64,000 nt of DNA from Diadema antillarum (Eukaryota), in assembly GCF_040938485.1 (NCBI RefSeq), contig NW_027272012.1:124001-188000 (forward strand), read 5' to 3'. Of the stretch, positions 32,683 to 64,000 are shown one piece after another. Within the stretch, counting starts at the first letter, position 1, and every line of letters starts with the position of its first letter. The notes beneath the pieces are model-generated. The model saw nothing but the letters and a program-made list of their open reading frames with translations, made no database searches and was not told the DNA's origin. Position numbers and translations under genes: made by a program.

Positions 32683-35600
32683 TCAAAGATATGTCTGTGG
32701 AAGGGACTCGAACTGTCGAAAGAAAAGTGAGAAGTTACACCAAAATTAGATAGTAATAATGGCAATAATTGTTGTATAGAACGTTATGATAATATGCTAT
32801 GATGCGATACATACCTTCTCATAATGTGAACGAGTTTCGTAATTGTAAAATAATGGAGTCACAGAGAACATGATGTCGCGTCGTTTTACTGGACAAGAAT
32901 ATTAGAGAATCGCGACTGAGACAACTTTACTAACTTACTAATAAGAAGTTTACATGCTGGCACTGTTCTCCTTTCCGTTGAAGAAAATAACTATGCATTC
33001 ACATAATAACGTTATAGAGCCATCAAAAAGTAATATACAATAACGTGTATAATCAATGATCAGTCACAAAATGACTTAGAGAGTACCAGCATTTTACTGA
33101 CAAATAAACGTCATATCTATATCCATACTGAAATGAAAATGTCTCAATTTGCTGGTAAGAAAGAAAAAGATGATACCAAAGAAGAAAACCACTGTGTGAT
33201 AGGTAAAAATATAATTTGCGAATGTGTGACGAAAACTCACGAATTCTTGCGACGAAGGTTCCGCAGTCTCTCGTCTGCGACTTTCATGTAGTGGTAAAGT
33301 GGGTGCTTGTGGCAGATACATCGATGAGTGGTCCACTCTAGCGCGCACTGGTGTAATCTTTAAGACAGAGATTTTAAAGTACATTTCATCAGATAATTTC
33401 TTTTGCATGGGAGAATGAACCCTTTCGTGCATGGTTATTTCAAACTTTTAATTGATGACCTCTTAAAGCATGCACCGAAGACTTACATCACCTAACAGAT
33501 GTCTCTAAAAATTGATGAAGTTACCAAGTTTGCAGATACGATTGGTATGTTGCTATATTCTTCCCCTCTTTTGGGGAGGGGGGGGGGGGGGCGGGTGGCT
33601 GCAATCCATCAAATACTTGACTATACAGTATGCCGCCCCAAAAATTACAATCGGATTTTCGCATTGATAACTCCCAATATGATTTAACTGTCTAAATGCT
33701 ACTTCAGGGTCTTGAAATATAACATCTTAGCTCTATTTTGCAAAAAAAAAAAAAAAAAACACACACACAAAAAAAAAACAAAAAACAAACCAACGTTCAA
33801 TTTGGTGAAGCGGTCACAGGTAAATATAGACTAAATTGCAAAGCATGTCATTTATTATAAGTCTGATTTTTTTTTCCAAGTTCAGCACTTGGATGCTCCT
33901 GGAACTGCATATGTATGAATGTGTGAACACAATGGACAGAACTTATATAGGGCAGAGATTCCTGACATGCTCTACAAAATTCCTCGTTTCTCTTTGACCA
34001 CTGAAGCAAATCGAATGGGGTTTCCTGTGAGATGTGTTGGCAATGAGTTGTAGTTTCATACCCTGGAATCGTATTTACAAGTAGATTGATTCACTATCTT
34101 TAAAGTTATTTTTGCAAAGGGTCCCGTTGTATTCTATTTTTCTTGGGGACATACGGTACAATGCATTTTATTTGACTTGCCAGCCCCCCCCCCCCCCCCC
34201 CCAATAAAATCATTCGCATTTGCAACGTCACAACACTAACAACGCGCATAGGACTTCTCACCACGATCTCAGAGGCGCTAACGGATCGTCTGCACTTACG
34301 TGGAAAGGTGCGGAATGCTTCAGGCTGTCAGTTACGCGCTTCATGCGCGCCTCAATTTCGGCGTCAATGTCGTCGGTGACGAACACCTGCTCCGCCTCGT
34401 ACGGCCAGTTTCCCGTGTCTATCATCGGAGTGTCCGCATTAAAGTCTGAAACTTCGAACATTCCTCTTTCATTCGCTGCGTTATCGAACATGTCCTCTGA
34501 CATTTTCAAGAAAACAAAGACATAAACAAACAATCATAAATCTTGAGGGATACTGCAACATTACAACACAGACAAAGATGCTTAAACTGTAGACGGTAAG
34601 AAGCATAGAGCAATGTTGAATCGTTTTTGTTAGTGCATGTGGTTAGATTATATCGTCATCTAAATCACGCACTCTAAACCGGGTCATCCCACGAGCCCGA
34701 CACCCACGAGTCATAATATGGTCCATGAGCTTGACAATGAAAAAAGTGCCATGGGTCATACAGCCCACGAGTCATACATCCCATGAGCTCGAAACTAGGC
34801 GAGCAAGGCCCACGAGTCTGTCACTAGGCAAAAAAAGGTCCATGACCCCCGACATCGACTTGGCAAACAAGGCCCACGAGACAGACACTGCGTAGACTAA
34901 GCCCTAAGATGTCATGAGTATCAGGCCCATGGTCCTTGTTTGCCTAGTGTTGGACTTATGGGCATTTGTTTTTACCTAGTGTCGGACTTGCGGGCCTTCG
35001 TTTCCTACTGTCTGATCCATTGGTCGTATTTGCCAAATGTCAAGCTCGTGGGCTGTATGACTCATGGGCTGTGTGACTCGTGGACTGTATGACTCGTAGC
35101 GTTGTCGGACTCGTGACGTGCACGCCTCACAACACGCTTCAGGACATCACGGATATTTATAGTTTATGGGGTAGAAAGAGAGAGAGATAGGCAAAACGAT
35201 GTTTATTGTACCTCCAAATCTGGGAGGGATCCCTTCCTCCATGAAACCAACGGTGTCATTGGGGTCCTTCTTCCGGTAAGCATACCCAGTCAGAGAGAAG
35301 CTAGCCTCTGATGCAGGCATGTCGAAGTCGTCTTCCCAGCAACCCATCTGCCTTCTGACGCAGGCGGCGATCACGAATACGACAAGGACACAGAAGAAGA
35401 AGCCAACGATGGAGAAGACGATCACGAGGATTTCCCATGATTCTACAGGTGATGAGCAAGACATTCAGTTGGAGGAACGACCACGAAGCAGTAATCTTAA
35501 ATCTAAGAGTCACGTGTGTGTGTGTGTGTGTGTGTCTATATACGTTCTCTTTAAAAGAATTTATACCACCCAGAGACAGCTGCGTCGTATTCGAGTAGTT

Positions 35601-36835
35601 TGTACAAAGTTCTGTATATAACAGACGAAATTCGAAAGTACAAAGTTCGTTATAGAGTGCAATGGCATTCCACGACCGTCAAGTTAATTCAGTGAAATCA
35701 TACGAACAGAACAGTATGTAGGCCCTGATAAGGTGTTATCAAAATGGAAAACAATTATACGCACGTAGATGTTTCAAAGAACGTATCGTGTTTTTTAAAG
35801 TCAAATCTTGATTGCGACTTACAGTAGATGTGGTAATGTCGATACTTCATAGTTCTCCAACTGGTTTGAAATTTACTATTTTGTAATTGGCTTCGTTTTT
35901 GTATTTAATTGAACATGATAAGCATGACTTGGTCGAAGATGAATATTACCGTTACTGTACACAATTACAGTATGCCAGAGTCGATGTGAAGAATGAAGTT
36001 ATGCTTGTTTCTTGAATTTCATAAATGCATGCATGAAGATCTATGTGCAGGCCAATGGGACACCTTTACCATGCTTATAACAACCCTGTATCTTTCAGTC
36101 TCCTCGTATGATTTATAATGATGATATCAATAATGATAATCGTCGTATATACCCATGATATCTCATCTGCAGTGATATCTCTGCTCTTCCAGAGGGCCTG
36201 TCATTTATAACCATATTCATTCCTCATTTAACGAGACATTTTGAGTAAAATCATTTTGTCCAAGTATTTAAGTACTAACAGGTGGCAGAACTTGAGCCCG
36301 AGACACCACTTCATGTCAAGAGTCCTATCCACTATACCACAGTGTCCACACTGACTTTACTGTGTCTTTTAAAGCCAATTACGTGAAGATGTTGAAGATG
36401 TAATTCCAGTTTTGCAAATGCAACCTGACGCTATAAAGCGTAATAAGCTGGGAGAAGAAATGAAAGAAGAAGAAGTGATTTTCACAGAAAGTCACGCGAA
36501 CATGCTGAAACCGTATCCAAACACCTACCTAGTCCTGTGAATGAGGCGACAGTTGTTGTGGCGACAGTTGTTGTGGTGGCAGTCGTCGGGGCTGGAAACG
36601 CTAATAGTCACATCGAGAGGTGAGAATTGATTAGCCAAAGAGAAACAACAAACTCATATAAATATAAGGATTAAAATGGTGTATATAGACAACAACATTG
36701 TATTGTCAAAACTGACAGAGGAAAAAGTAAAATCCATGGTATAAATTTTGCAATATCGTCTGGCACAGAATCGATAATAAGGTGCGTGAGTGCTGGAAAC
36801 CTGAAATAATGACGTGAGGTGATACTATCATGCGC

Positions 36836-36883
<48 letters not shown>

Positions 36884-39800
36884 GGCCTTAGGACGTCACA
36901 TAGTATCTAAAGTCCACATTGTGCAAGAATGACGACATCTTCGTCGCTTGGAATTTCAGTAATGAACATGTACATTTATACGATTTTGAAGTGGTTCGTT
37001 ACGAGTGTGGGTCAGGGTGGCAAAGAGTGCTGCATGAAAAAGAAGAAAGTAAGGGAAAGAAGGAGGAGACGAAGAAGAACGATGGGATGCGACAAGGGAA
37101 AATGAGAAGAGAAGGACGAGAAGGACAACTGGACAGAAAGGTGAAAGAGGAGAAAAAGAAGAGGTAAAGAAGAGGGATAGAAAACGAAAATAAGAATGAC
37201 GCGGATAAGGAAAATAGATAAAAAGAGGAAGGACAACAAGAACAAGGTGGAAAGGGAGGCAAAGAAGAATCAAAAGAGAAGAAGGAGCAACAGAAGAGGA
37301 CTATTATTTGTGAAAAACCAAAATGTGATCATTAGAGAGAGTGGCGAGGACTTACGTGTACAATATCGCCCGGGGAGAGTGTCAACGTAAGGGTCCATTA
37401 AGTCGGGCGGGCAAGAGCAGGTGTATCCGCGTGTTCCAGTGTCAGAGCAATTCGCGTCTGGATGGCAGTCGGCCAAACCCGTTAAACATTCATCATGCGC
37501 TGTCGCAAAGGATTTAGAAAGGTGAAGTTAATGATCGTGTTCACGTATCAGTTTTGTAAACGTATTCAATACTAGGATGTCGCAACTCTTTCGTAGACAG
37601 CTCAGAAACAAACAAACAAACAAACAAACAAACAGACAACAACAACATCAAAAGCAGAAATCAACTGTCTTAGTTCTAAAATTATCTCGCCCAAGTTTGT
37701 ATTTGAACGTTGTTTCCAATCCCTACTTCACAGAGATTATTTCATTTTCGTTAGAAAGTTAGAATACCATTGAAGACACACACAGCAATGCCATGATTTT
37801 AACTTGATCTTAACTCTAAAGTTCAACTTACATTCTTACATGAAACACCATCCCCTCCCCCCCCCCCCCCCCCTCCCCGTCTTGCACAAGGCCTATATAG
37901 GGATATCAGGTTCTCGTTAGGAGAGAAAGAATTCCGTTGCCTCCTGCTAAATAACACAGAAAGACCTACGTAAGACTGCGACTGCTGACGCCTGAAGCGA
38001 AATGTTCCTCGGAAGGAGCTTCTTGTGGATCTCTAGATACTGCGTTGTTTCGTTAGACACGACCTCGGCCGTCACATTGGTAGAAACGAAACCGATGGCG
38101 TAATCGACAATGATACTCCCCTGCTTGAAGGAAAAGACTTCGCACGTAGCGAGACGGAAGACTGAATCGAGTAGCGAATCGTACATCTCCTTCAGCTACA
38201 CATCATGGGAGCAAAGACATGGAGTAATAAGTGAGTAGGGTCTTTGTCTCCGATTGGAGGCCCAGGGGAGGGATATCGAAGAGTGCAGGAGTACATAGTT
38301 CGGTAATGATCGTTATTCTGAACGTTCGTTATACCCAAGTTTCGTCAATCGGAAAATGAAATAAGATTCTTTAATCCGAAAACGAAATCAGGTGAACATG
38401 CTAACGTATCTTTGGAATGACGGACTTTATTTCTGTTTCGGATTAATGAACATTCTAAATGACGACGAGTTTTTACATTTTCGGATCAACCAACTTCCGG
38501 TATAATAAACTTCATTTCACTTTCGGATTAACGAACCTTCGGAATGATGAATCTTATTTCATTTTGGGATTAACGAGGATTAACGAATCTTCGGAATTGT
38601 CATCATATGATTTCAAGAAAGAACGACCAATGTAAAGACCAAGGTACTTACAGAACAGAGCTGACAATGGTCATTAAGGAAGTTGTACCAAAAAAAAAAG
38701 ATATGGATATTGGACAACACAAAGCACAATATCACCATGAGCACGTTTGTAAAAACTTAGTGATGAATGTTCTTGACACCACTCATTACCACAATCACTG
38801 ACATTTCCGTATCATTAGACACAACTTGTTATGTACATACTCATATTGTCAAATTCAATATCAACTCCCAACATGCACACTTAAAGGTAAAGTTCACAAG
38901 CCCAGGTAAGCAGCAGGATTAGCTTACTGAATTGCAGAATTCCGATTCCAAAACCTTGAATATTTCCGAAGTTGGATCAGAGTAATCATCTTGAAACACC
39001 GCGTTCTCTCCCTTTATCTCAACAATCTTCACCTGCATCATGTAGGACACAACCTCTTGATTACAGAAAGAAAGAAAGAAAGAAGAAAAAACAGCGTGGT
39101 TACTTTCAGATACTCAGAATCGATTGAAACACAGCAGGTTAAAAGAGAAGCACCTGTACCCATATTCCTTCCGATTGGGTACACGCTATAGACCTAAGAA
39201 ACAACAACAAAAGCAACGAAAGTTTGCATCTACGAGGACAGTTTTGAGAGCATGTTTTAAACACATCTAAGCAGAGGTGAAACAAAATGTGTGAAGCACT
39301 AACATCCACGTCACTTCCATGTCATACTGTACCACCATATAGATACTGGCGACACAATGAGTTAGCCAGAAATGTGATATTTATTTATTTATTAATTACT
39401 TTTTTATTCCGATTTCAAGCCTTCTCACTTCTCTTATCAAAGGTTAGGGAAAATATATTGCTGAAGTAATCAGGAAGCTCTGGAAATATATTTTGAATTG
39501 TGATCGCTCGTAGCCAGCTTCTTTGCTGGCATTTTGAAGAAACACAACCAACACAAACACAAACACAAACACATACAGTTGACCCGCAGAACATGCAGAA
39601 TGAAACAACGCACATGGAAGTAGGCCTACGACTTGAATATAATAAAGAGTGTGCTTACAGGCACCAACAAAAACACCGCATGGGTAAATATTATTCCTTT
39701 TTCATTTAGCATTTTTTCTTTTACATTTGTAAAACTGATTAGATGGGGACCAACTATTCTCCAACATTCCGTCAGAATAATTATACTCATGACGCGATTT

Positions 39801-42800
39801 GCAAAGAGAGTCAAATGAATCTCACCGTTACATTTGCCGTTCACGCGTTCATAGCCCTGCCAACAAGCACAAAATCCGCCACTTTTATCTTCGATGCATA
39901 CCTCGTTGTCTTCAACGCATTTAACGCCACAGTACGCTTCTGGAAATAATAAATGCAGTAGAAAAATAGGTCATGATGTGCTTAATTAGTATAATGTGCA
40001 ATGATAATGTAGTGATCAAACACAGGAAAAAACCTCACAGCTGGTATACGAGGGAGTTCAGGGTTACAGATCACTGTCATTAAGTTGATTTTCCGCTTCC
40101 CTGGTAGAGTAGGTGAATGTCACAGAATAGACAATAATAGTAATAGGGGCAATGATGATAATGATGATTAATAAGAACGTATGTATGTATATATATTAGT
40201 AAAGCGTTTTAAAATAATTCAAAATCTATCATAATCTTTAGCTGGAATCATAATAGAATATTACGTCTTCCATTCACTACAATAGAATATCCGTCCGTCG
40301 GTGAATTGTGCATATGTAGTAGAAACAGTGTATAGCATCTGAAAGCACGCTGAGCATCAGAAGGCTTTATTTTTTTTAACCATTGCTACTGTTGGCATAT
40401 TTTTTCCGTTACATTCTAAGCAAATGCGTTTGCGAAAAAAAGTTCTTAAAGCTATCAAGTTAATCTTTTGACGTATCACCTGCGAGTTTGAGAGAACATT
40501 GGACCAGTTTGAACATATACATTGTAATCCAAAATTGTAATCAAATGTGACGTAATTGCTCTCGCCTTGTTCTTTACCTTTTAAAGAGAATTTGTAAAAA
40601 TATGAAATGAAATGGAATAAAGTGAGTTTGCTGGTTAAGACTTAGACAGTGATAAAGTATGTCATTTCTGAGAAACAAATAACGGAGGAACAAGGGGCAA
40701 GCAAGATACGAACCGCTTGCTGTGACAACCGTCTTTGTGGTTAACAGGTCCTGTCCTTTGCTCGTTGTGGAAGGTTGTGCTGCCAAAGTCGTCGCCAGAG
40801 GTGATGGCCGGTCAGTGACAGAGGTTGAAGGATCAGTGCCTGTTGATTCCGAAGGCCTAGTCGAGCTGGTTTCTCTCTCTGTCTGTTCTGTGACCGTTGT
40901 GGGTTGACTTTCCCTCTTTGGTTCAGCTGTTTCTCTTTCTGTGAACAAGTCAGTAGTCATCTGGTGTTGTGATGTGAAGGCGTGTGTACTTGATGACATT
41001 GATTCTGTCTGATCACTCGCTGTTGTTGAAAGGCTTTCTCTTGATGGAGTCATGGCAGTCGCCATATCCGTTTGGATTTGGTTTGTAACGGTTGTCAAAT
41101 GACTCGTAGTTGTTGCCTCACTTGCTGTCAATTCTGTGGTTGTGTATGTAGTTACCTGACGTGATGTTAAGGTACGTTGAGTTGAAGACACAGGTTGTGT
41201 CTGGTCTGTTGCTGATAACGGAAGGTCATCTGTTGTTGATGCCTGGGTAGTTACAGCTTCTGTCTCCACCTCATCTGTAACCATTGACGATTGACTATAA
41301 CTGGTTAGCCTACTTACGGTGACTAAGACAGATGTTGCATCAGGACGTGTTGATTCTTGCGACGTGGTAATTTCTGTCTCTAACGGCTCTGTGACCTTTG
41401 TAGGCTCGCTTTTACTTGTTGGCTCACTTATGTCTAATTCAGTAACTAAGGAAGACGTTGCGTCATGGCGTGTTGTAAAGCTACGTTGAGTTGAAGTGAT
41501 GTTCTCTGTCTGATCTGTCAATAATCTTGATGTACTTTCTTTTCTTGACCCTTGAGTAGTTGTTATTTCTGTCTCTATCTGATCAGTTACTGTTGTCAAC
41601 TGGCTTTCACTAGTTGTTTCGAATTCGGTGATTAAGACAGGTGTCGTAACAAGACGTGTTGTGAATCTGCGTTGCGTTGGAGACATGTCCTCGGTCTGAT
41701 CTGTCAATGTCGATACACTTTCTTTTGTTAGTTCTTGAGTCGTCATTATTTCTGTCTCTACCCGATCTGTGACCATTGTCGCCTGGCTTCCACTAGTCGC
41801 CTCACTTGTTTCGAATTCGGTGATTAAGGCAGATGTTGTATCTTGAAGGGTTGTACTGCTGCTTGGAGTTGAGGTCATTGGTTGGGTTTCTTCCGGCAAT
41901 GAAGTCGACACACTTTCTTTCGTTGTTTCTTGGGTTGACATAATTTCTGTCTCTAACTGATTCGTGACCGTTGTCGATTGGCTTCCACTAGTCGCCTCAC
42001 TTGTTTCGAATTCGGTGATTAAGGCAGATGTTGTATCTTCCCGGGTTGTACTGCTGCTTGGAGTTGAGGTCATTGGTTGGGTTTCTTCGGGCAATGAAGT
42101 CGACACTTTTTTCGATGTTTCTTGGGTTGACATAAATTCTGTCTCTAACTGATTCGTGACTGATGTCGATTGGCTTCCACTAGTCGCCTCACTTGTTTCG
42201 AATTCGGTGATTAAGGCAGATGTTGTATCTTGAAGGGTTGTAAAGGTGCTTTGAGTTGAGGTCATTGGCTGGGTTTCTTCCGGCAATGAAGTCGACACAC
42301 TTTCTTTCGTTGTTTCTTGGGTTGACATAATTTCTGTCTCTAACTGATTCGTGACCGTTGTCGATTGGCTTCCACTAGTCGCCTCACTTGTTTCGAATTC
42401 GGTGATTAAGGCAGATGTTGTATCTTCCCGGGTTGTACTGCTGCTTGGAGTTGAGGTCATTGGTTGGGTTTCTTCGGGCAATGAAGTCGACACTTTTTTC
42501 GATGTTTCTTGGGTTGACATAAATTCTGTCTCTAACTGATTCGTGACTGATGTCGATTGGCTTCCACTAGTCGCCTCACTTGTTTCGAATTCGGTGATTA
42601 AGGCAGATGTTGTATCTTGAAGGGTTGTAAAGGTGCTTTGAGTTGAGGTCATTGGCTGGGTTTCTTCCGGCAATGAAGTCGACACACTTTCTTTCGTTGT
42701 TTCTTGGGTTGACATAATTTCTGTCTCTAACTGATTCGTGACCGTTGTCGATTGGCTTCCACTAGTCGCCTCACTTGTTTCGAATTCGGTGATTAAGGCA

Positions 42801-51800: not shown

Positions 51801-54800
51801 AATAATGTCGACACGCCCTCCCTTCTTGTTTCCTGCGTTGTCCTTATTTCTGTCACAACCTGATCTGTTTCCGTCGTCGCTTGTTTTTCGCTTGTTGGCT
51901 CACTCGTTTCCAATTCGGTTGATAAGACAGATGTTATATCTTTACTTAACGTATAACTGCGTTGAGTTGAAACCATTTCTTCGGTCTGATCTGTCAGTGA
52001 TGTCGATATACTGTCTGTCATTGAATCTTGAGTCGTCATTATATCTGTGGCCGTTGTCGCCTGGCTTTCACTGGTTGGCCCACTTGTTTGTAATTCAGTG
52101 ACTAGGGTATGTGTTGTAAAAAGCCTTGAAGTAAAACTGCGTTGCGTTGAAGCCATGTCTTCTGTCTGATCTGTCAATAATGTCGACACGCCCTCCTTTC
52201 TTGTTTCCTGCGTTGTCCTTATTTCTGTCACAACCTGATCCTTTGCAGTGGTCGCTTGTTTTTCGCTTGTTGGCTCACTTGTTTCAAATTCGGTTGATAA
52301 GACAGATGTTGTATCTGGACTTGATGTATAACTGCGTTGAGTTGAAACCATTTCTTCGGTCTGCTCTGTCAGTGATGTCGACATACTGTCTGTCATTGAA
52401 TCTTGAGTCGTCATTATATCTGTCTGTATGTGATCTGTGGCCGTTGTCGCCTGGCTTTCACTGGTTGGCCCACTTGTTTCTAATTCAGTGACTAGGGTAG
52501 GTGTTGTAAAAAGCCTTGAAGTAAAACTGCGTTGCGTTGAAGCCATGTCTTCTGTCTGAGCCGTCAATAATGTCGACACGCCCTCCTTTCTTGTTTCCTG
52601 CGTTGCCATTCTTTCTGTCATTACCTGATCTGTTGCAGTGGTCGCTTGTTTTTCGCTTGTTGGCTCACTTGTTTCAAATTCGGTTGATAAGACAGATGTT
52701 GTATCTGGACTTGATGTATAACTGCGTTGAATTGAAACCATTTCTTCGGTCTGATCTGTCAGTGATGTCGATATACGGTCTGTAATTGAATCTTGAGTCG
52801 TCATTATATCTGTCTGTATGTGATCTGTGGCCGTTGTCGCCTGGCTTTCACTGGTTGGCCCACTTGTTTGTAATTCAGTGACTAAGGTAGTTGTTGTACC
52901 AATACGTGTTGTAAGGCTGCGTTGCGTTGAAGCCATGTCTTCTGTCTGATCTGTCAATAATGTCGACACGCCCTCCCTTCTTGTTTCCTGCGTTGTCCTT
53001 ATTTCTGTCACAACCTGATCTGTTTCCGTCGTCGCTTGTTTTTCGCTTGTTGGCTCACTCGTTTCCAATTCGGTTGATAAGACAGATGTTATATCTTTAC
53101 TTAACGTATAACTGCGTTGAGTTGAAACCATTTCTTCGGTCTGATCTGTCAGTGATGTCGATATACTGTCTGTCATTGAATCTTGAGTCGTCATTATATC
53201 TGTGGCCGTTGTCGCCTGGCTTTCACTGGTTGGCCCACTTGTTTGTAATTCAGTGACTAGGGTAGGTGATGTACCAATACGTGTTGTAAGGCTGCGTTGC
53301 GTTGAAGCCATGTCTTCTGTCTGATCTGTCAATAATGTCGACACGCCCTCCTTTCTCGTTTCCTGCGTTGTCCTTATTTCTGTCACAACCTGATCCTTTG
53401 CAGTGGTCGCTTGTTTTTCGCTTGTTGGCTCACTTGTTTCAAATTCGGTTGATAAGACAGATGTTGTATCTGGACTTGATGTATAACTGCGTTGAGTTGA
53501 AACCATTTCTTCGGTCTGCTCTGTCAGTGATGTCGATATACTGTCTGTAATTGAATCTTGAGTCGTCATTATATCTGTCTGTATGTGATCTGTGGCCGTT
53601 GTCGCCTGGCTTTCACTGGTTGGCCCACTTGTTTGTAATTCAGTGACTAGGGTAGGTGTTGTAAAAAGCCTTGAAGTAAAACTGCGTTGCGTTGAAGCCA
53701 TGTCTTCTGTCTGATCTGTCAATAATGTCGACACGCCCTCCTTTCTTGTTTCCTGCGTTGTCCTTATTTCTGTCACAACCTGATCCTTTGCAGTGGTCGC
53801 TTGTTTTTCGCTTGTTGGCTCACTTGTTTCAAATTCGGTTGATAAGACAGATGTTGTATCTGGACTTGATGTATAACTGCGTTGAGTTGAAACCATTTCT
53901 TCGGTCTGATCTGTCAGTGATGTCGATATACTGTCTGTAATTGAATCTTGAGTCGTCATTATATCTGTCTGTATGTGATCTGTGGCCGTTGTCGCCTGGC
54001 TTTCACTGGTTGGCCCACTTGTTTGTAATTCAGTGACTAGGGTAGGTGTTGTAAAAAGCCTTGAAGTAAAACTGCGTTGCGTTGAAGCCATGTCTTCTGT
54101 CTGATCTGTCAATAATGTCGACACGCCCTCCTTTCTTGTTTCCTGCGTTGTCCTTATTTCTGTCACAACCTGATCCTTTGCAGTGGTCGCTTGTTTTTCG
54201 CTTGTTGGCTCACTTGTTTCAAATTCGGTTGATAAGACAGATGTTGTATCTGGACTTGATGTATAACTGCGTTGAGTTGAAACCATTTCTTCGGTCTGAT
54301 CTGTCAGTGATGTCGATATACTGTCTGTAATTGAATCTTGAGTCGTCATTATATCTGTCTGTATGTGATCTGTGGCCGTTGTCGCCTGGCTTTCACTGGT
54401 TGGCCCACTTGTTTGTAATTCAGTGACTAGGGTAGGTGTTGTAAAAAGCCTTGAAGTAAAACTGCGTTGCGTTGAAGCCATGTCTTCTGTCTGATCTGTC
54501 AATAATGTCGACACGCCCTCCTTTCTTGTTTCCTGCGTTGTCCTTATTTCTGTCACAACCTGATCCTTTGCAGTGGTCGCTTGTTTTTCGCTTGTTGGCT
54601 CACTTGTTTCAAATTCGGTTGATAAGACAGATGTTGTATCTGGACTTGATGTATAACTGCGTTGAGTTGAAACCATTTCTTCGGTCTGATCTGTCAGTGA
54701 TGTCGATATACTGTCTGTAATTGAATCTTGAGTCGTCATTATATCTGTCTGTATGTGATCTGTGGCCGTTGTCGCCTGGCTTTCACTGGTTGGCCCACTT

Positions 54801-57800
54801 GTTTGTAATTCAGTGACTAAGGTAGGTGATGTACCAATACGTGTTGTAAGGCTGCGTTGCGTTGAAGCCATGTCCTCTGTCTGATCTGTCAATAATGTCG
54901 ACAAATCCTCCTTTGTTGTTTCCTGCGTTGCCATTCTTTCTGTCTCTACCTGATCTGTTGCCATGGTCACTTGGGTTTTGCTTGTTGGCTCACTTGTTTC
55001 ATATTCGGTTGGTAAGACAGATGTTATATCTTTACTTAACGTAAAACTGCGCTGAGTTGAAACCATTTCTTCGGTCCGATCTGTCAGTGATGTCGATATA
55101 CTGTCTGTAATTGAATCTTGAGTCGTCATTATTTTTGTCTCTATGTGATCTGTGGCCAATGTCGCTTGGCTTTCACTTGTTGGCCCACTTGTTTGTAATT
55201 CAGTGACTAGGGTAGGTGTTGTATAAAGCCTTGACGTAAAACTGCGTTGAGTTGAAACCATTTCTTCAGTCCGATCTGTCAGTGATGTCGATATACTGTC
55301 TGTCATTGAATCCTGAGTCGTCATTTTTTCTGTCTCTATTTGATCTGTGGTCGTTGTCGCCGGGCTTTCAATTGTTGACCCACCTGTTTGTAATTCAGTG
55401 ACTAAGGCAGGTGTTGTACCAATACGTGTTGTTATGCTGAGTCGCGTTAAAGCAATGTCCTCTGTCTGATCTGTCGATAATGTCGACACATCCGTTGTTG
55501 TTGTGTCCTGCGTTGTCATTATTTCTGTCTCTACCTGATCTGTTGCCGTGGTTGCTTGTTTTTCTCTTGTTGGCTCACCTGTTCCAAGTTCGGTGTCTAA
55601 GACAGGTGTTGTAACAAGACGTGTGGTAGAGCTGCGTTGCGTTGAGGCCATATCCTCCGTCTGGTCTGTCAATGAAGTCGATACACTTTGTTGCTCTGTT
55701 TCTTGAGTCGTCATAATTTTTGTCTCTACTTGATTCGTGACTGTTGTCGATTGGCTTTCACTAGTCGCCTCACCTGTTTTGAATTCGGTGAATAAAGCAG
55801 ATGTTGTTTCTTGACGGGTTGTAAAGCTACCTTGAGTTGAGGTCGTTGGTTGCGTTTCGTCCGTCAATGCGGTAGACACACTTTCTTTCGTTGATTCTTG
55901 AGTAGTTGTTATTTCTGTTTCTACCTGATCTGTGACTGTTCTTGATGGGATATCACTAGTTGGTTCACTTGTTTCCAATTCAGTTAGTAAGGTAGGTGTA
56001 GTAGCAAGATTTGTTGAAAGCTGAGTCGTCATCATTTCTGTGTCTACCTGATTCGTGACTGTTGTCGATTGGCTTTCACTAGTCGCCTCACTAGTTTTGA
56101 ATTCAGTGATTGAAGCAGATGTTGCATCTTGACGGGTTTTAATACTACGTTGAGCTGAGGTTATTAGAGACATTTCGTCCGTAGATGAAGTTGACTCACT
56201 TTGTTTTGTTCTTTCTTGAGACGTCATAAAATCTGTTTCTGCCTGATTCGTGACTTTAGTCGCTTGACTGCCACTCGTTGGCTTACTTGTTTCGCTTGTT
56301 GAAACAGATGTGAGCACACTTTGTGTCGTAAGGCCAAGTTGTGTTAATGATTCTGTTTGGACATAATCTGTCACTGACGTTGAAAAATCTTGTCCTATTG
56401 ATTCCTTGGAAGTTGTTGTTTCTCTCCCGGTCTGTTCTGTGACCATTGAGGTTTGGGAATCCCGATTTGCTTCACTTACTTCTGTTGTTTGGACTGTTAC
56501 TGCTGTTACCACATATGCAAGGATATGAATAGAATACCATATTACAGTGATGAAATATATATCTATTCAGCACATGGTAACAACAAGAGCAATGGTAATG
56601 GCTGTCAGGCAGTGATACAAAGCATTACTTCAAATATTGACATAAGAATACGTCGTAATGTTATATTTTCATTGTGCCTTTGACAACAAAACTAATAATA
56701 ACGAAAACGAAGCATTATTCAGAGTAAAGCTGATAGCCAGACATATATATGCATACAATGTATGTATATCACATCNNNNNNNNNNNNNNNNNNNNNNNNN
56801 NNNNNNNNNNNNNNNNNNNNNNNNNNNNNNNNNNNNNNNNNNNNNNNNNNNNNNNNNNNNNNNNNNNNNNNNNNNNNNNNNNNNNNNNNNNNNNNNNNNN
56901 NNNNNNNNNNNNNNNNNNNNNNNNNNNNNNNNNNNNNNNNNNNNNNNNNNNNNNNNNNNNNNNNNNNNNNNNNNNNNNNNNNNNNNNNNNNNNNNNNNNN
57001 NNNNNNNNGCAACAAAATTTGTATACGTGGTCGCCATTTGATAGCGCAAAGCGGCCACTGACAGGCAGAGCCTTATAGATGCTGGTCTGCGTATGGAGCT
57101 GCTAGGTAGGAACCAAAGAGATTTTACACCCATAAGATCTCTATAGTTTGAACTTTCTTTTTTCTTCCTCTTTTCTTTACTGCGTAGAGTCCTAGTTGTA
57201 GCCGGTGTTTCACTATGCCATATGCGACTGTCGACAACATGCATATCATAATGTATGTTGGTCCATTAAAGAGTGTGATTCCTATAACGAGAAAGGAACT
57301 GAATATTCAAGCATTTCATCACTAACAATGGAGCTATACAGGTAAAAGTTCATCACTGCTCATTCTTTTCAATTAAACCGATGTATAACCGTATACAGAC
57401 TTAAGACCACAAAGATGCCAAAGAGGGAAAAAAGAGACTGACGGAAATTTAGCAATTATAATCCTTCAACCGTCAAAGACAACCTTAATTAGGTTATTGT
57501 GACATGAGATAAAGCGCGAATGATGTATTTTTTTCTTGATATTAAAGGACAAGTTCACCTTCATAAACATAAGGATTGAGAAAATGCAACAATATTAGTA
57601 GAACACATCAGTGAAAGTTTGAGGAAAATTGGACAATCGATGCAGAAGTTATGAATTTTTTAAATTTTTGTGTTGGAACCGCTGGATGAGGAGACTACTA
57701 CAGCTTGTGAGTCATATACGTACAACAGTATAAAGAAAATGTAAAAGAAAATTCAACATATTTTCACTTTTTTCGTATAATAAAAGAGCACTTGACTTGC

Positions 57801-60261
57801 CTCTTTCTAAAGGCAGGGGGAATAATATTACCCATAACATTTGTCGGTAACAAGTCAGGGGAATGTGTACTTTTTTCAAAAGATGGAATTTTGTGAAATT
57901 CTCTTTATGTTTTCCTTATATTGTTGTACGCATGTGACATCTAAGTTATTCATACACTGCAGTAGTCTTCTCATCCAGCGGGTACTGCACAAAAACTTCA
58001 AAAATTCATAACTTTTGAACGGATTGTCTGATTTTCCTCAAACTTTCAATGATGTGTTCTACTAATATTGCTACATTCTCTCAATCCTTATGTTTATGAA
58101 GGTGAACTTGTCCTTTAAAGAAGGAAATCTGATGAAGATTTCAACGTGCGTGGAACAACAGTTCCGGAGTTACACAGCCATGACAAACTTACCAACAAAG
58201 TATAGTTTTTGTACATCATTACTACCACAAACTTACCAACAAAGTATGGTTTTCGTACATCATTACTANNNNNNNNNNNNNNNNNNNNNNNNNNNNNNNN
58301 NNNNNNNNNNNNNNNNNNNNNNNNNNNNNNNNNNNNNNNNNNNNNNNNNNNNNNNNNNNNNNNNNNNNNNNNNNNNNNNNNNNNNNNNNNNNNNNNNNNN
58401 NNNNNNNNNNNNNNNNNNNNCCTATGCTATTCTGTTTATTTGATTATACGTAGCTAATGTAGGCATTCTGGTTACTGGATAGGGAGATGGGAATTATTTC
58501 CACCTCCCTGGTTATACTAACCTGATGCTAAAAGACTCCGGCCAACTCGATTGTGGTGTGAATCTGTCGAGGAAGGAAATAATGAATCACCGGTCTTAGT
58601 GAAAAAAAAACAACAACTATTTTGTAATTCTGATGTGTTTATTAATTATCTGCCAGGCAATTGGTGCAACATGTGTATATCAGATTCAGTATATTCAGTA
58701 ACTCTTTTGACGTAAAGATGTGCGCTTCGTACAACTGTATCAGAACAAAAGAGATTTACTACAAGAAATGTATACTATATGTACTTGCTATTTATTGGTG
58801 CGCGTTTGTATCAGCACTACACTAAATGTTATCAGGAATCTGATATGAAGTAGCTGGAACATTCTGTCGAATGAACGTTACGAATGCGATGTCAATTTTG
58901 GTATCTACTAAACACTGCTCAAGCAGCTTTTTAACCAGTGGCCGCCATGTGTCCTCAAAAAAAAAGAAAGAAATTGTATACAATCTGACTTATATGCAAC
59001 TGGGCTCACAAAACTTTGTAGGAGCCAATGTGGGCCTCGGGGAAAAAAAGATTGAGTCAGCGCTGTGCGCACTGAATGGAAAATATTGTTTGCGTTATGA
59101 CCACGTACAGACGTAGGCCTACTGCCAGAGTCGGAGACGCTACTTATATTTTTATTTTCTATTAGGACATTGTCTCTTGGCTTGTGTATATAACACTAAG
59201 AGTCTTCGGTCACCTCGTCTAGAACGATGAATCAAAATGTAATGTATGTCTACTTTGTTACCTCTCTCGCCGGCTGCGGCATGACATGACGGGAAATTTG
59301 CAGGGCGCCACCCTCCGTCATCGCACTGTGCTTCGGACGGACCAAGGAGTACCTGCTGCGTGCTGGAGCAGAAGAGTTCAACCCTGTCTCCATGGTTGTA
59401 CCACCCCGGGGAGTCGGCCAGGGGATAAACACTCACACCGTCTTCGTCCAAACTTGGAGGCAGTCTGCATTTGGCTGCATCAGCCATTGGTTGCGAGAAA
59501 GCAAAAGAACGGTTGTTCAGCATACTGTCACTACATCGTTTGATTTCCATTGTTTGCAATATCAACAGGAGATACTGAAGGTTAATTTCGTAGTAATAGA
59601 AGAGGTAAAAGTGCGACCACTTTAACGAAACTGGTACTTAACAATGCTTTAAAAAAAATGAATGACATCAAGCTGCCATGGGCTTACAAGTGTCGCTGTC
59701 ACCTACAGGCGAATTCTCTTCTCTGAATAAAAAACAACAACTCACAACTGGTATTTGCTGTAATTTGCAAGTAAAGATGAACTCTTAAAACCATCACTCA
59801 TTTACTAAATCCTCAGTCATTTCAGGGTATGACCGATGTCCCTCTACTTTGCTGTGCACTGCAAGCCATTTTCTTTTTTGGGTGTAATCATGGCAGGATC
59901 ATTTCATTTTTCTGTAAATTCAAGTGAGAATAAAGCATGATGACTCGTATCGAAAGTTTTGCCCACAAATCTCCCAAACAGTCTCGTATCACCATTAAAA
60001 CTCTTTGTTTACTGGTGCATTTTGGCCTCCCCATCCACATCCATCCCTTTAACTCATTTTCTTGGTGTCCGCCCTCACCATAACAGACGAAATTTAAAGG
60101 ATCGGGTGCCCATGTTCCGTTCCCCGTGCACGTGCTCGTCGAAGACCCAGAAGAGGTGAAACGACTCGTGTCATTGCAAGAAAGCTTGACTACGTTTGTC
60201 CTGTTCGTCAGTGGCGCCACGCGAACTCTTGATGGGTCGCTCAGTGAGATGGAACTACAGG
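32683..60261 (-). CDS. Giant type-I transmembrane mucin: Sushi x2, T/S/E-rich repeats, EGF, SEA, EGF, TM, cytoplasmic tail; at least 5,813 aa, 5'-incomplete
   Basis: Phase-consistent GT-AG exons, 5' to 3': 60261-60079 (Sushi), 59474-59262 (Sushi), 56502-40714 (repeats), 39939-39826 (EGF-like), 39055-38928 and 38195-37970 (SEA, FKQGSIIVDY), 37499-37356 (EGF), 36600-36529 (Thr stalk), 35442-35212 (TM), 34496-34300, 33357-33241, 32712-32683 (FESLPQTYL*). Total 17,444 nt. No signal-peptide exon was found. Confidence 0.88.
34685..35120. mobile_element. Foldback MITE built from CCCACGAGTCATACAG-type subrepeats, in a mucin intron
   Basis: The left CACGAGCCCGACACCCACGAGTCATA mirrors the right TATGACTCGTAGCGTTGTCGGACTCGTG. 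Multiple CCCAYGAG on the left and CTCRTGGG on the right. TSD not resolved. Confidence 0.65.
35212..35442 (-). CDS. Mucin transmembrane exon (SWEILVIVFSIVGFFFCVLVVFVIAACVRRQMGC...)
   Basis: About 25 hydrophobic residues followed by an RR stop-transfer. Acceptor cacctgtag, donor G|GTACAA, phase 1-1. Confidence 0.9.
36838..36880. repeat. (AT)n microsatellite
   Basis: Pure AT run read directly from the sequence. Confidence 0.95.
37030..37300. repeat. Purine-rich (GA/GAA) low-complexity tract
   Basis: Almost exclusively A/G on the plus strand. It generates spurious F/S/L-rich ORFs on the minus strand. Confidence 0.8.
37356..39939 (-). CDS. Mucin EGF-SEA-EGF module (4 exons)
   Basis: AYCGVKCVEDNEVCIEDKSGGFCACWQGYERVNGKCN, then VVSYMMQVKIV...YSDPTSEIFKVLESEFCNS|LKEMY...FKQGSIIVDYAIGF, then HDECLTGLADCHPDANCSDTGTRGYTCSCPP...GRYCT. 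Confidence 0.9.
38298..38600. repeat. MITE-like repeat with TTCGGATTAACGAA subrepeats
   Basis: Repeated TTCGGATTAA/TTCGGAAT motifs, with inverted TTAATCCGAA on the left. Ends not resolved. Confidence 0.45.
40714..56502 (-). CDS. Single 15,789-bp mucin-repeat exon (5,263 codons)
   Basis: Uninterrupted frame (ORF track 40574-56512), trimmed to acceptor ...gtaacag|CA at 56502 and donor AGC G|GTTCGT at 40714. Phase 1-1, length divisible by 3. Confidence 0.9.
41770..42930 (-). repeat. Second coding tandem array: 3 x 387 bp (129 aa)
   Basis: Shadow ORFs at 41964, 42351 and 42738. The unit SLPEETQPMTST...TTSALITEFETSEATSGSQST differs from the main array. Confidence 0.9.
43740..54960 (-). repeat. 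Homogenised coding tandem array: about 29 units of 390 bp (2 x 195 bp), with 375-, 351- and 387-bp variants
   Basis: Antisense shadow ORFs recur at 390-bp steps (53302, 53692, 54082, 54472, 54862), at a 375 step (48712 to 49087) and as 351-bp units (46811 to 47162). Confidence 0.95.
56776..57008. other. Assembly gap (N run)
   Basis: N characters. Confidence 1.
57546..58114. mobile_element. TTAA-flanked MITE with long (~170-bp) TIRs (Kolobok-like)
   Basis: TTAA|AGGACAAGTTCACCTTCATAAACATAAGGATTGAGA...TCTCAATCCTTATGTTTATGAAGGTGAACTTGTCCT|TTAA. Inverted similarity continues inward (AATATTAGTAGAACACATCA / TGATGTGTTCTACTAATATT; CGCTGGATGAG / CTCATCCAGCG). Confidence 0.9.
58180..58268. repeat. ~44-bp tandem repeat running into an assembly gap
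   Basis: CAAACTTACCAACAAAGTATRGTTTTYGTACATCATTACTA occurs twice before the Ns. Confidence 0.75.
58269..58420. other. Assembly gap (N run)
   Basis: N characters. Confidence 1.
59262..60261 (-). CDS. Two Sushi/CCP domain exons of the mucin gene
   Basis: CSSISLSDP...KLSCNDTSRF...STCTGNGTWAPDPLNFVCY and KCRLPP...YNHGDRVELFCSSTQQVLLGPSEAQCDDGGWRPANFPSCH. Both show the C-C-C-W-C pattern and are phase 1-1 exons. Confidence 0.88.
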
Positions 60262-60819
60262 CTTTGAGGAGAGCAAAATAGAATTTGGAGTTAGATACTA
60301 CATTTTGTGATCGTAAAGACTCGATCAAGAGTAGTTCACACTTAAATACCTTCCGTCGACAAACTTCCAAAAAGTAGATTTACTTTATCGATAAAGAGTA
60401 ACTTAACTTACCCCTATGGGTGTAGCAATTGCCCTTTACCCCCCCCCCCCCCCCCCTTCACCCCCATCCCCTTTCTCTGAGGACATACTTTCTGGATGTA
60501 CGCTTATCTATTTTGATTGTAAAATCCGCCAAGAGTAGAGTGACCTGGTATAGCTTGGAACGTTTTTATCTCTATATTCATGTAAATAATCAGTAAATAA
60601 AAATTAGCTAGCAGTCCGTCCATTCAGGGTCAAGTCAAACTGATACTTGAAGAAGAAATTCTCGAAACATACTTGTTATATGAATACCAGGAATTAGCGA
60701 AAAATATGTTTGTTAGTCACCAGGATGCGGTCTTCTGGTTTCGATTCGAAGTTGCACCTGGAGCTACAATGCACGTAGCAGGTCTCATAAAGAAGTCTGT
60801 GAGATCATGGACGTACTAA

Positions 60820-61246
60820 ACATGGACTAGAAACGAAGGTCTTTCTTTGATCCCATCATCACTGCCGCCACCTGATGATGTGCATCTAATGAGTACATGT
60901 ACATTCAGATGGTTTGGACAATGACGATTGTGCAATCTTGCGTCGCATTTACAAAAAAAAAAAAAAAAAAAAAAAAACTGTTTCCCTCATTGCAGCCTTA
61001 TTTTGCCGAGGTGTCTTTTCAGACTCAACTGCCTTTGTATAAACACCAATGAAAAGGAGCAGCAAACCCGAAACATGACAGTTTCCTGTCACAAAATGGA
61101 AAATTACTGAAGTGGAATTTGTGGACAAGCATGTAACATGGTATAATGATAGGAAATACATGTCGTCTACGGTTACTGTCCATGCTTACTCTGAACAATG
61201 TGCGAAAAATGGGGAAAATTAGATTACAAATCAAAACCAACCTGCC
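60820..61246 (+). repeat. Dispersed repeat, copy 2 (homologous to 6112-6538)
   Basis: See copy 1. It carries a poly-A expansion at about 60953-60977. Confidence 0.85.
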
Positions 61247-63439: not shown

Positions 63440-63575
63440 TGACTTGCTATCGTCGCTATGTTCACGAAGACGTGGTCTACAGGTAGGCGCTCTCCGCACT
63501 CTGTCACAAGGCTCTCGGTTCAAGCCATGTAGTAGTACCTGTCTCTCTGGTCAACACATTTCACTCTGTAACGAT
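63440..63575 (+). mobile_element. Probable tRNA-derived SINE
   Basis: A-box-like TGGTCTACAGGTAGG (about 63473-63487) and B-box-like GGTTCAAGCC (63517-63526) at tRNA-like spacing. No complete cloverleaf or CCA. Confidence 0.4.
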
Positions 63576-64000
63576 AGCTATGCTATAAAATCCCCCCCCC
63601 CCCACTGTTGTTGTTTTCTTCTTAGGCCAACTTGTTGTTCTTCTTTGCGAGTTTTTTTTTTTTTTGGATAAAAAGATGTGTATCTGGCAGGAAATTATGC
63701 CGCTTTCGTGGTTGATGGATTTAACGTGGGTGCGCCTTCAACTGCAACCTGGCTAGGATATTCTACCAAGGGAGGGGAGTGAATTCACCCGAAAAAATGT
63801 AGGTTTGACCCCAAAGACTTTCGTTAAAAAAAAAGAAGAAAAATCATTGTAAAGTCCTTTGAGCACTCTGACGTGATCTAAAAGGAGACCTCCGGATGAT
63901 TTTCAGACTTATACAGTTTCAATTCAATTCAATCATAGTTTATTTCCAATCAACGAAAATCAAAACATAGTACAAAGTATACATGTCATAAAATGATATT

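What the first reader, a model, noticed from the sequence alone, without database searches (positions are those of the whole stretch)
32683..60261. Giant Sushi-tipped, MUC3/12/17-type transmembrane mucin in an invertebrate
Seen: 12 phase-consistent exons encode at least 5,813 aa as Sushi-Sushi / ~5,260-aa O-glycosylatable stalk / EGF-SEA-EGF / Thr stalk / TM / ~160-aa tail. Known: the EGF-SEA-EGF-TM-PDZ-ligand C-terminus is the layout of the vertebrate gut glycocalyx mucins MUC3A, MUC12 and MUC17, which lack N-terminal Sushi domains. Inference: complement-control-type binding domains held far from the membrane on a cleavable stalk could form a recognition, anti-adhesion or sensing system that automated annotation would likely fragment. 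I cannot tell from the sequence alone whether it is already described.
Basis: partly seen in the sequence, partly recalled or inferred. Interest (0 to 1): 0.75.

Follow-up and report, generated by a model that had tools for sequence, protein, structure and literature searches.

The report
Sushi-tipped membrane mucin of sea urchins
This is a real sea-urchin gene for a giant cell-surface mucin, laid out like the human gut mucins MUC3, MUC12 and MUC17 but carrying two complement-type Sushi domains at its outer tip; two other urchins have the same gene, split in two by their annotations, and nobody has studied it.

Summary
On the minus strand, 12 exons with GT/AG borders and compatible phases (60261 to 32683) splice into an open 5,811-aa frame: Sushi, Sushi, a 5,263-aa Thr/Ser-rich tandem-repeat domain in one 15.8-kb exon, EGF, SEA (GSIIV), EGF, a short Thr stalk, TM, and a 164-aa tail ending QTYL. 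Both assembly gaps lie in the intron between Sushi 2 and the mucin exon, so they break no reading frame. The 5' end, including the signal peptide, is missing from the window.

Strongylocentrotus purpuratus and Lytechinus variegatus proteins align colinearly with the whole C-terminal module (36-38% identity, E 1e-77 to 1e-87) and end in the same SLPQTYL. In S. purpuratus, four Sushi exons are spliced in a RefSeq model to one uninterrupted 4,364-aa mucin ORF. That ORF is annotated as two genes, "uncharacterized/Sushi" and "mucin-5AC", formerly "mucin-17".

No RNA runs could be listed, so splicing in this species is inferred. Likeness to MUC3/12/17 is shown for layout only, not for specific sequence kinship. 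No paper on the gene was found. Earlier notes of this scan report another Sushi-tipped membrane mucin elsewhere in this genome. Verdict: a new variant of a known kind, moderately interesting.

The parts
60079..60261 (-). Exon A: Sushi/CCP domain 1 (4 Cys and Trp), phase 1-1. The upstream exon or exons are not in the window.
   Evidence: Splice sites read. Pfam Sushi E 1.2e-3. PDB phmmer hit to CR2, 8e-5. 48% identical to S. purpuratus Sushi 1 exon.
59262..59474 (-). Exon B: Sushi/CCP domain 2, phase 1-1.
   Evidence: PDB phmmer hit to complement factor H, 1.4e-11. 39% identical to S. purpuratus Sushi 4, the last Sushi before its mucin exon.
56503..59261 (-). Intron between Sushi 2 and the mucin exon. 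It holds both assembly gaps (56776-57008, 58269-58420).
   Evidence: N runs located. No domain-like ORF and no signal-peptide exon here. The S. purpuratus RefSeq model has no exon between its last Sushi exon and its mucin exon.
40714..56502 (-). Exon C: one 15,789-nt exon encoding a 5,263-aa Thr/Ser-rich, acidic, Pro-poor tandem-repeat (mucin) domain with 65-aa units in 130-aa super-repeats. Phase 1-1, with a weak donor GTTCGT. A second in-frame acceptor lies 9 nt downstream, at 56493.
   Evidence: Open frame. TRF periods 195, 351, 387 and 390 nt. Composition. Junctions.
39826..39939 (-). Exon D: EGF-like domain 1 (6 Cys), phase 1-1.
   Evidence: 46% identical to the L. variegatus orthologue, tiling without a gap.
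38928..39055 (-). Exon E: N-terminal half of the SEA domain, phase 1-0.
   Evidence: 40% identical to the orthologue. Part of the 84.8-bit SEA profile match.
37970..38195 (-). Exon F: C-terminal half of the SEA domain, carrying the FKQG|SIIVDY candidate autoproteolysis site. Phase 0-1.
   Evidence: Pfam SEA E 0.019. Whole-library phmmer finds the urchin orthologues. Alignment. In the AF2 model of the L. variegatus orthologue, the equivalent G|S falls in the beta2-beta3 hairpin.
37356..37499 (-). Exon G: EGF-like domain 2 (EGF_3), phase 1-1.
   Evidence: Pfam EGF_3 3.6e-6. 47% identical to the orthologue.
36529..36591 (-). Exon H: 21-aa Thr-rich juxtamembrane stalk, phase 1-1. Absent from the S. 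purpuratus and L. variegatus proteins.
35212..35442 (-). Exon I: transmembrane helix and the start of the cytoplasmic tail (conserved GY.YRK), phase 1-1.
34300..34496 (-). Exon J: acidic cytoplasmic tail segment, phase 1-0.
   Evidence: No Pfam family.
33241..33357 (-). Exon K: cytoplasmic tail segment with the conserved MY.P.APT.PL motif, phase 0-0.
32683..32712 (-). Exon L: last 9 codons and the stop. The C-terminus SLPQTYL fits a class I PDZ-ligand pattern and is identical in three urchin genera.

Best explanation
One minus-strand gene encodes a type I transmembrane mucin of a sea urchin. Earlier notes of this scan name the species as Diadema antillarum; I did not check that.

Shown: the exon chain and the domain order, and an orthologue in S. 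purpuratus and in L. variegatus.

Inferred mechanism, by analogy with SEA-type membrane mucins. The 5,263-aa Thr/Ser-rich domain is densely O-glycosylated and forms a stiff stalk roughly 1 micrometre long. The SEA domain cleaves itself at G|SIIV during folding, leaving the stalk held non-covalently on the membrane stub. Mechanical load can then shed the stalk instead of tearing the membrane. The C-terminal QTYL binds a PDZ scaffold that keeps the protein at the apical surface. The two Sushi domains at the distal tip give the glycocalyx a protein-binding head, which the vertebrate MUC3/12/17 mucins lack.
For: Gene structure. Twelve exons with canonical splice sites and compatible phases give an open 5,811-aa frame.

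C-terminal chain. My spliced C-terminus aligns end to end with S. purpuratus XP_030843203.1 / XP_011662852 and L. variegatus XP_041479383.1. Identity is 36-38% over about 420 aa, E 1e-77 to 1e-87, with no gap at any of my exon junctions D to L and an identical SLPQTYL end.

Sushi-mucin link.
- S. purpuratus LOC105437673 (RefSeq, 2,861 aa) splices four Sushi exons onto the mucin exon in phase 1.
- An older 3,772-aa model runs from Sushi-Sushi through the mucin domain and SEA into EGF2.
- The two Diadema Sushi exons are the only conserved blocks upstream in a tblastx comparison with S. purpuratus.
- The mucin exon has no start codon or signal peptide of its own, and the Sushi exons have a phase-1 donor that needs a downstream partner.

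SEA domain. Orthologues pass Pfam's SEA threshold. The family profile finds solved SEA domains of ADGRF1, TMPRSS11D, MUC16, agrin and MUC1. It aligns the urchin G|S to the end of the cleaved ADGRF1 fragment.

Layout features of MUC3/12/17 are taken from PMC13643018.
Against: - There is no transcript evidence: no RNA run could be listed, so read laying could not be used.
- The intron between Sushi 2 and the mucin exon holds two assembly gaps.
- No signal-peptide exon was found in the window, nor in 10 kb upstream of the S. purpuratus gene. The S. purpuratus model starts with 13 residues that are not a signal peptide.
- The current RefSeq models in S. purpuratus and L. variegatus are computational and fragmented.
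- The stalk has only 2.9% Pro and 16% acidic residues, which is not a classic PTS composition. O-glycosylation, SEA cleavage and PDZ binding are all untested.
- GSIIV differs from the G|S[V/I]VV consensus by a conservative V-to-I change.
- The AF2 model of the module has only moderate confidence (pLDDT 65), and Foldseek matches to SEA domains are weak.
Confidence: 0.7

Rival explanations
1. There are two transcription units. The Sushi exons belong to a separate, probably secreted, Sushi protein gene. The mucin gene starts from an unseen first exon lying in one of the assembly gaps or elsewhere in the 2.8-kb interval.
For: Two gaps lie between the Sushi exons and the mucin exon. There is no transcript evidence. 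Phase 1-1 compatibility is the rule for extracellular module exons, so on its own it is weak evidence. Earlier notes report a free-standing copy of a Sushi head next to another mucin in this genome (s1-215048).
Against: The same arrangement, Sushi exons directly upstream of the orthologous mucin exon, is kept in S. purpuratus. There a RefSeq model and an older model both splice them together, with no exon in between. L. variegatus also has a Sushi exon about 540 nt upstream of its mucin ORF. No signal-peptide exon with a phase-1 donor is visible in the readable part of the interval.
Confidence: 0.12
2. The gene model is the same but the job differs. The protein is not a barrier glycocalyx mucin. 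It is instead a gamete-recognition or embryonic apical-matrix anchoring protein, with the acidic Thr/Ser-rich repeat acting as a hydrated or ion-binding spacer.
For: The stalk is Pro-poor and strongly acidic. In echinoderms SEA modules are also combined with hyalin repeats (crinoid hyalin-like protein with 3 SEA domains). The protein that gave SEA its name is a sea-urchin sperm membrane protein implicated in egg-jelly recognition (PMC2119707). No tissue data exist.
Against: The sperm protein is GPI-anchored and was not among the SEA hits. The TM, the conserved PDZ-type end and the SEA-EGF chassis are those of apical membrane mucins.
Confidence: 0.2
3. The gene is real, but the size of the repeat exon is an assembly product (expanded or collapsed array), so 5,263 aa is not the true stalk length.
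For: Repeat units are 90-97% identical over 13 kb. The assembly has gaps nearby. Mucin arrays are typically length-polymorphic. Database models of the S. purpuratus orthologue range from 1,800 to 3,772 aa across annotation versions.
Against: The frame stays open over 15.8 kb, all repeat periods are multiples of 3, and no N lies inside the exon. S. purpuratus has a comparable uninterrupted 4,364-aa ORF.
Confidence: 0.2

Closest known systems
S. purpuratus LOC105437673 (uncharacterized / Sushi domain-containing, 2,861 aa) plus the adjacent XP_030843203.1 (mucin-5AC isoform X1, formerly XP_011662852.1 mucin-17); L. variegatus XP_041479383.1 (mucin-3A-like)
   Same: They have a colinear EGF-SEA-EGF-TM-tail module (36-38% identity) and the identical SLPQTYL end. 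Sushi exons are spliced in phase 1 to one giant mucin exon. These are probably orthologues: the S. purpuratus cluster was that species' only hit among the cluster representatives (clustered at 50% identity) listed at E<1e-3.
   Different: S. purpuratus has four Sushi exons and Diadema has two, matching its first and fourth. The mucin repeats show no detectable similarity between the species. Diadema has an extra Thr-stalk exon before the TM. The S. purpuratus and L. variegatus genes are each annotated as two genes.
Human MUC3A/MUC3B, MUC12 and MUC17 (intestinal SEA-type transmembrane mucins)
   Same: The repeat domain lies in one huge exon. Two EGF-like domains flank a SEA domain with a G|S-hydrophobic motif. 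There is a single TM and a cytoplasmic tail ending in a class I PDZ-type motif (features from PMC13643018).
   Different: They have no N-terminal Sushi domains. Their stalks are Pro-rich PTS, against 2.9% Pro here. No specific sequence affinity was detected, and there is no synteny information. The urchin tail is longer (164 aa) and has its own conserved motifs.
Other SEA proteins with solved structures (ADGRF1/GPR110, TMPRSS11D, MUC16, agrin, MUC1)
   Same: They share the SEA fold and the position of the G|S site. The best per-target structural matches of the model are MUC16 SEA domains.
   Different: The surrounding architecture is different. They are not mucin-EGF-SEA-EGF-TM proteins, apart from the MUC1 and MUC16 mucins, which lack the flanking EGFs.
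[quoted passage not shown]
   Same: It is a sea-urchin surface glycoprotein with EGF domains (PMC2119707). That it contains the founding SEA module is my recollection.
   Different: It is 470 aa, GPI-anchored and has no giant stalk. It was not among the hits of the SEA exon search.
Other Sushi-tipped SEA mucins noted by this scan in the same genome (s1-215048, s1-215178)
   Same: They are reported to have a Sushi head, a mucin domain, EGF/SEA modules and a TM.
   Different: They are reported with six Sushi domains and, in one case, a doubled mucin-EGF-SEA module. I could not compare sequences, so these remain unchecked leads.

Membership tests
MUC3/MUC12/MUC17-type transmembrane mucins | [quoted passage not shown] | tested here: met
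   One 15,789-nt exon of 195/390-nt repeats with an open frame. Feature as stated in PMC13643018.
MUC3/MUC12/MUC17-type transmembrane mucins | Pro/Thr/Ser-rich composition with dense O-glycosylation | tested here: inconclusive
   S+T is 41% but Pro is only 2.9% and D+E is 16%. Glycosylation itself cannot be tested with these tools.
MUC3/MUC12/MUC17-type transmembrane mucins | Juxtamembrane SEA domain with the cleavage motif G|S[V/I]VV | tested here: inconclusive
   The SEA domain is present. The motif reads GSIIV, a conservative V-to-I change at the third position after the G|S cut; S. purpuratus has GSIVV. Cleavage is not testable here.
MUC3/MUC12/MUC17-type transmembrane mucins | [quoted passage not shown] | tested here: met
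   Exons D and G, with 6 Cys each; EGF_3 at 3.6e-6.
MUC3/MUC12/MUC17-type transmembrane mucins | Single TM and a cytoplasmic tail ending in a class I PDZ-binding motif | tested here: met
   There is a hydrophobic helix in exon I. The C-terminus QTYL fits S/T-X-hydrophobic and is identical in three genera. Actual binding is untested.
MUC3/MUC12/MUC17-type transmembrane mucins | Specific sequence or phylogenetic affinity to the vertebrate genes (shared descent) | tested here: inconclusive
   No vertebrate MUC3/12/17 appeared among the 5 library hits of the SEA exon. The profile's best solved SEA is ADGRF1.
SEA domain (PF01390) | Match to the family profile over the whole domain, with a beta-alpha-beta-beta-alpha-beta fold | tested here: met
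   Orthologues score 28-32.5 bits against a cut-off of 26.4. The Diadema spliced sequence scores 84.8 bits against profile A1, which hits solved SEA domains. The predicted topology fits, at moderate confidence.
Sushi/CCP domain (PF00084) | About 60 residues, four Cys, a conserved Trp, encoded by a phase 1-1 exon | tested here: met
   Both exons have the 4 Cys and the Trp. PDB phmmer gives factor H at 1.4e-11 and CR2 at 8e-5. The Pfam scores of 19-20 bits fall just under the 20.7 cut-off.

The most novel reading that the evidence does not exclude
The complete membrane-mucin chassis (single-exon stalk, EGF-SEA-EGF, TM, PDZ-type end) already existed in the common ancestor of echinoderms and vertebrates, with a Sushi binding head. 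On this reading MUC3/12/17 are its head-less descendants, and transmembrane SEA mucins are not a vertebrate invention. As I recall, Lang et al. (PNAS 2007) concluded that they are; I could not read that paper here. In urchins the head could make the glycocalyx a tethered, sheddable sensor: a ligand caught a micrometre from the cell would pull the SEA domain apart.
Probability: 0.15. Interest if true: 0.7.

Novelty: new variant of a known kind. Interest (0 to 1): 0.45.

Why it matters
Membrane mucins of the MUC3/12/17 type build the enterocyte glycocalyx in mammals, and as far as I recall they are treated as a vertebrate innovation. The same layout, conserved in three sea-urchin genera, means one of two things. 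Either the layout is older than vertebrates, or it can be assembled repeatedly from phase 1-1 exons.

The Sushi head is a feature no vertebrate SEA mucin has. It gives a concrete, testable idea: binding domains displayed at the tip of a sheddable stalk.

There is also a practical point. The S. purpuratus and L. variegatus annotations cut this gene in two, so catalogues of urchin surface or immune proteins built on them miss the architecture. Sea-urchin embryos are a tractable system in which to test SEA cleavage and glycocalyx function.

Tried and rejected
1. Word-index protein search with the end of the giant ORF (candidates 2,930-9,330 aa): no hit, so no full-length model of this gene is in the collection.
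2. Sequencing-run search with the unique 5' part of the mucin exon: none was listed, so read laying was never used and splicing could not be tested with reads.
3. PDB phmmer with the single SEA exon: nothing, even at E 10. A family profile was needed instead.
4. Pfam on single exons gives only sub-threshold Sushi and SEA scores, because introns split the domains. The spliced protein has no reference, so it was analysed only in local scripts and was not sent to Pfam, structure prediction or database searches.
5. A search for a signal-peptide first exon in 60262-64000, in the B-C intron, and in 10 kb upstream of the S. purpuratus gene: nothing convincing.
6. tblastx of the upstream regions of S. 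purpuratus and Diadema: only the two Sushi exons are conserved.
7. Synteny with the S. purpuratus downstream neighbour: none in the window.
8. Third word search with the L. variegatus C-terminal module (583-1,857 aa): only itself.
9. Foldseek on the AF2 model: no match at E<=1e-3. Generic ferredoxin-like folds come first, and SEA domains are best only by per-target TM-score.
10. Literature: no paper names the urchin accessions. Lang et al. 2007 and Pelaseyed & Hansson 2020 are not held, so the statement that transmembrane mucins arose in vertebrates is my recollection only.
11. Considered and rejected, pseudogene: the frame is open over 17.4 kb and the module is conserved.
12. Considered and rejected, relation to the 63-kDa sperm protein: it is GPI-anchored and was not hit.
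Full report
WHAT IS THERE. The region holds one minus-strand gene. Its centre is a single open frame, 40577-56566 stop to stop, the longest in the window. It is a tandem array of 195-nt units organised in 390-nt super-repeats; other periods are 351, 387 and 318 nt, all multiples of three. Reading the flanks base by base gave eleven more exons with AG/GT borders. A script that located each border by its unique sequence context joined the twelve exons into 17,435 nt. This is 5,811 codons after one split first codon, with no internal stop.

GAPS. The two N runs (56776-57008 and 58269-58420) both lie inside the intron between exon B (ends 59262) and exon C (starts 56502). No coding sequence touches them, so continuity of frame across them is not an issue. 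What is uncertain is the length of that intron and whether a small exon hides in a gap. I did not fill them or look them up. In S. purpuratus the corresponding intron is short and the RefSeq model has no exon in it.

DOMAINS.
- Exons A and B are classic phase 1-1 Sushi exons with four Cys and the Trp. They match complement receptor 2 (8e-5) and factor H (1.4e-11) among solved structures. Pfam scores are just under threshold.
- Exon C encodes 5,263 aa with 26.8% Thr, 14.2% Ser, 16.3% Asp+Glu, 7.6% Gln and only 2.9% Pro, plus one Cys and three N-glycosylation sequons.
- Exons D and G are six-Cys EGF-like domains (EGF_3 3.6e-6 for G).
- Exons E and F together make a SEA domain. The half in exon F reaches only Pfam E 0.019 and finds nothing in the PDB alone. 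The spliced sequence scores 84.8 bits against a profile built from urchin, crinoid and fish SEA domains.
- That same profile finds the solved SEA domains of ADGRF1 (1.6e-6), TMPRSS11D, MUC16, agrin and, weakly, MUC1. It aligns the urchin G|S to the last residue of the cleaved ADGRF1 fragment.
- Exon H is a 21-aa Thr stalk and exon I holds the TM helix. Exons I to L give a 164-aa acidic tail ending QTYL.

RELATIVES AND THE TEST OF THE EXON CHAIN. No full-length model of this gene is in the protein collection, and no sequencing run could be listed. Transcript evidence was therefore out of reach. A whole-library phmmer search with exon F gave five hits. Two cover the whole exon: an S. purpuratus cluster and an L. 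variegatus protein.
- The S. purpuratus cluster is XP_011662852.1 "mucin-17", 3,077 aa; later versions are "mucin-5AC isoform X1/X2", about 1,800 aa.
- The L. variegatus protein is XP_041479383.1 "mucin-3A-like", 1,061 aa.

My spliced C-terminus aligns with these from EGF1 to the last residue: 36-38% identity, E 1e-77 to 1e-87. No gap falls at any of my junctions D to L, apart from a one-residue gap just after the J/K junction, and all three proteins end SLPQTYL. The four Diadema exons D, E, F and G tile the module without overlap. This validates the chain from the mucin exon to the stop.

For the Sushi link, an older 3,772-aa member of the S. purpuratus cluster starts with two Sushi domains. 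These are 37% identical to the Diadema head (E 5e-17), and the model runs through the mucin domain into SEA and EGF2.

The S. purpuratus genome shows why the current models look different. One uninterrupted 4,364-aa ORF (L001:1166-14257) is annotated as two genes. LOC105437673 (2,861 aa) ends 54 nt before the start of the "mucin-5AC" gene, whose first Met is an internal Met of the same frame. LOC105437673 begins with four Sushi exons spliced, in phase 1, onto that ORF.

Diadema Sushi 1 matches S. purpuratus Sushi 1 (48%), and Diadema Sushi 2 matches Sushi 4 (39%), the last one before the mucin exon. In a tblastx comparison of the upstream regions these are the only conserved blocks.

In L. variegatus the mucin ORF is broken into three frames and is also annotated as two genes. 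A Sushi exon lies about 540 nt upstream of it.

These supports are comparative and computational, not transcripts.

WHAT REMAINS OPEN IN THE STRUCTURE. Exon A starts in phase 1, so at least one exon lies upstream. I found no credible signal-peptide exon in the remaining 3.7 kb of the window, in the B-C intron, or in 10 kb upstream of the S. purpuratus gene. The S. purpuratus model starts with 13 residues that are not a signal peptide. A type I membrane protein needs one, so the true 5' end is unknown in both species.

HOW IT PROBABLY WORKS. This paragraph is inference from the families involved. For MUC1 and the MUC3/12/17 group, PMC13643018 describes three things. First, strain-driven autoproteolysis occurs at G|S[V/I]VV during folding, and the two chains stay associated and can separate under force. 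Second, two EGF-like domains flank the SEA domain. Third, a class I PDZ motif holds MUC17 at the brush border.

The urchin protein has each of these elements in the same order. Its motif is GSIIV (GSIVV in S. purpuratus). In an AF2 model of the L. variegatus module the G|S falls in the beta2-beta3 hairpin, but confidence is only moderate (pLDDT 64.8) and Foldseek support is weak.

I therefore read it as a sheddable apical glycocalyx mucin with a stalk of roughly one micrometre, my estimate from about 0.2 nm per glycosylated residue. Its distal end carries two Sushi domains, a protein-binding module that vertebrate SEA mucins lack. What the head binds, and whether binding signals through the conserved tail, is unknown. 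The Pro-poor, acidic stalk is atypical for a mucin and might escape finders that require a minimum Pro content. That last point is a conjecture.

COMPARISON WITH WHAT IS KNOWN. At the level of layout the match to MUC3/12/17 is complete apart from the Sushi head and the composition of the stalk. At the level of descent nothing is shown. The SEA exon found no vertebrate MUC3/12/17, and the profile's nearest solved SEA is that of an adhesion GPCR. All modules sit in phase 1-1 exons that shuffle easily. NCBI's automatic names (mucin-17, mucin-3A-like, mucin-5AC) show that pipelines saw the likeness, but they are not evidence of orthology.

A cnidarian "mucin1-like" SEA-TM protein has been reported (PMC9080433), so SEA-tethered mucin-like proteins outside vertebrates are not unheard of. 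I found no paper on the urchin genes. The sea-urchin sperm protein behind the name SEA is a small GPI-anchored protein and is not close. Notes of this scan report further Sushi-tipped SEA mucins on other pieces of the same genome and name the species. I used these as leads only.

VERDICT. The gene is a new variant of a known kind: a SEA-type membrane mucin with a Sushi head, conserved in echinoids, present in databases only as fragments under automatic names, and uncharacterised. Interest is moderate (0.45). It bears on the origin of membrane mucins and offers a testable design, but function, glycosylation, cleavage, expression and even the 5' end are unproven.

Noticed in passing
L001:1166-14257 (S. 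purpuratus GCA_000002235.4, AAGJ06000016.1, about 34.065-34.079 Mb): One uninterrupted 4,364-aa ORF is annotated as two genes. LOC105437673 reaches its stop through a tiny frame-shifting 'intron' and ends 54 nt before the internal Met used as the start of the 'mucin-5AC' gene. This looks like an annotation artefact.
   Followed up: yes
L003:3978-12001 (L. variegatus GCA_018143015.1, CM031028.1): The orthologous mucin ORF is broken into three overlapping frames (3978-9467, 9394-9942, 9911-12001) and is annotated as two genes. The cause could be assembly frameshifts in the repeat or real decay; it is not resolved.
   Followed up: partly
window 59262-60261 versus L002:11260-13804: The number of Sushi domains differs between species. 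There are four Sushi exons in S. purpuratus and two in Diadema, which match the first and fourth. The 604-nt Diadema intron between them has no room for more and contains no gap.
   Followed up: partly
window 36529-36591: There is a 21-aa Thr-rich mini-stalk exon between EGF2 and the TM. It has no counterpart in the S. purpuratus or L. variegatus proteins.
   Followed up: partly
window 56493-56502: Two in-frame AG acceptors lie 9 nt apart at the start of the mucin exon. They could give isoforms differing by three residues.
   Followed up: no
window 23525-24496 (+): A 323-aa ORF matches the RsmB/F (NOL1/NOP2/Sun-type) RNA methyltransferase family (Pfam 2.1e-19). It is probably the last exon of an NSUN-like gene on the opposite strand from the mucin gene.
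   Followed up: partly
window 40714-56502: The stalk is Pro-poor (2.9%) and acidic (16% D+E). Only about 6% of 100-aa windows reach both 40% S+T and 5% Pro, so mucin finders that require Pro might miss it.
   Followed up: partly
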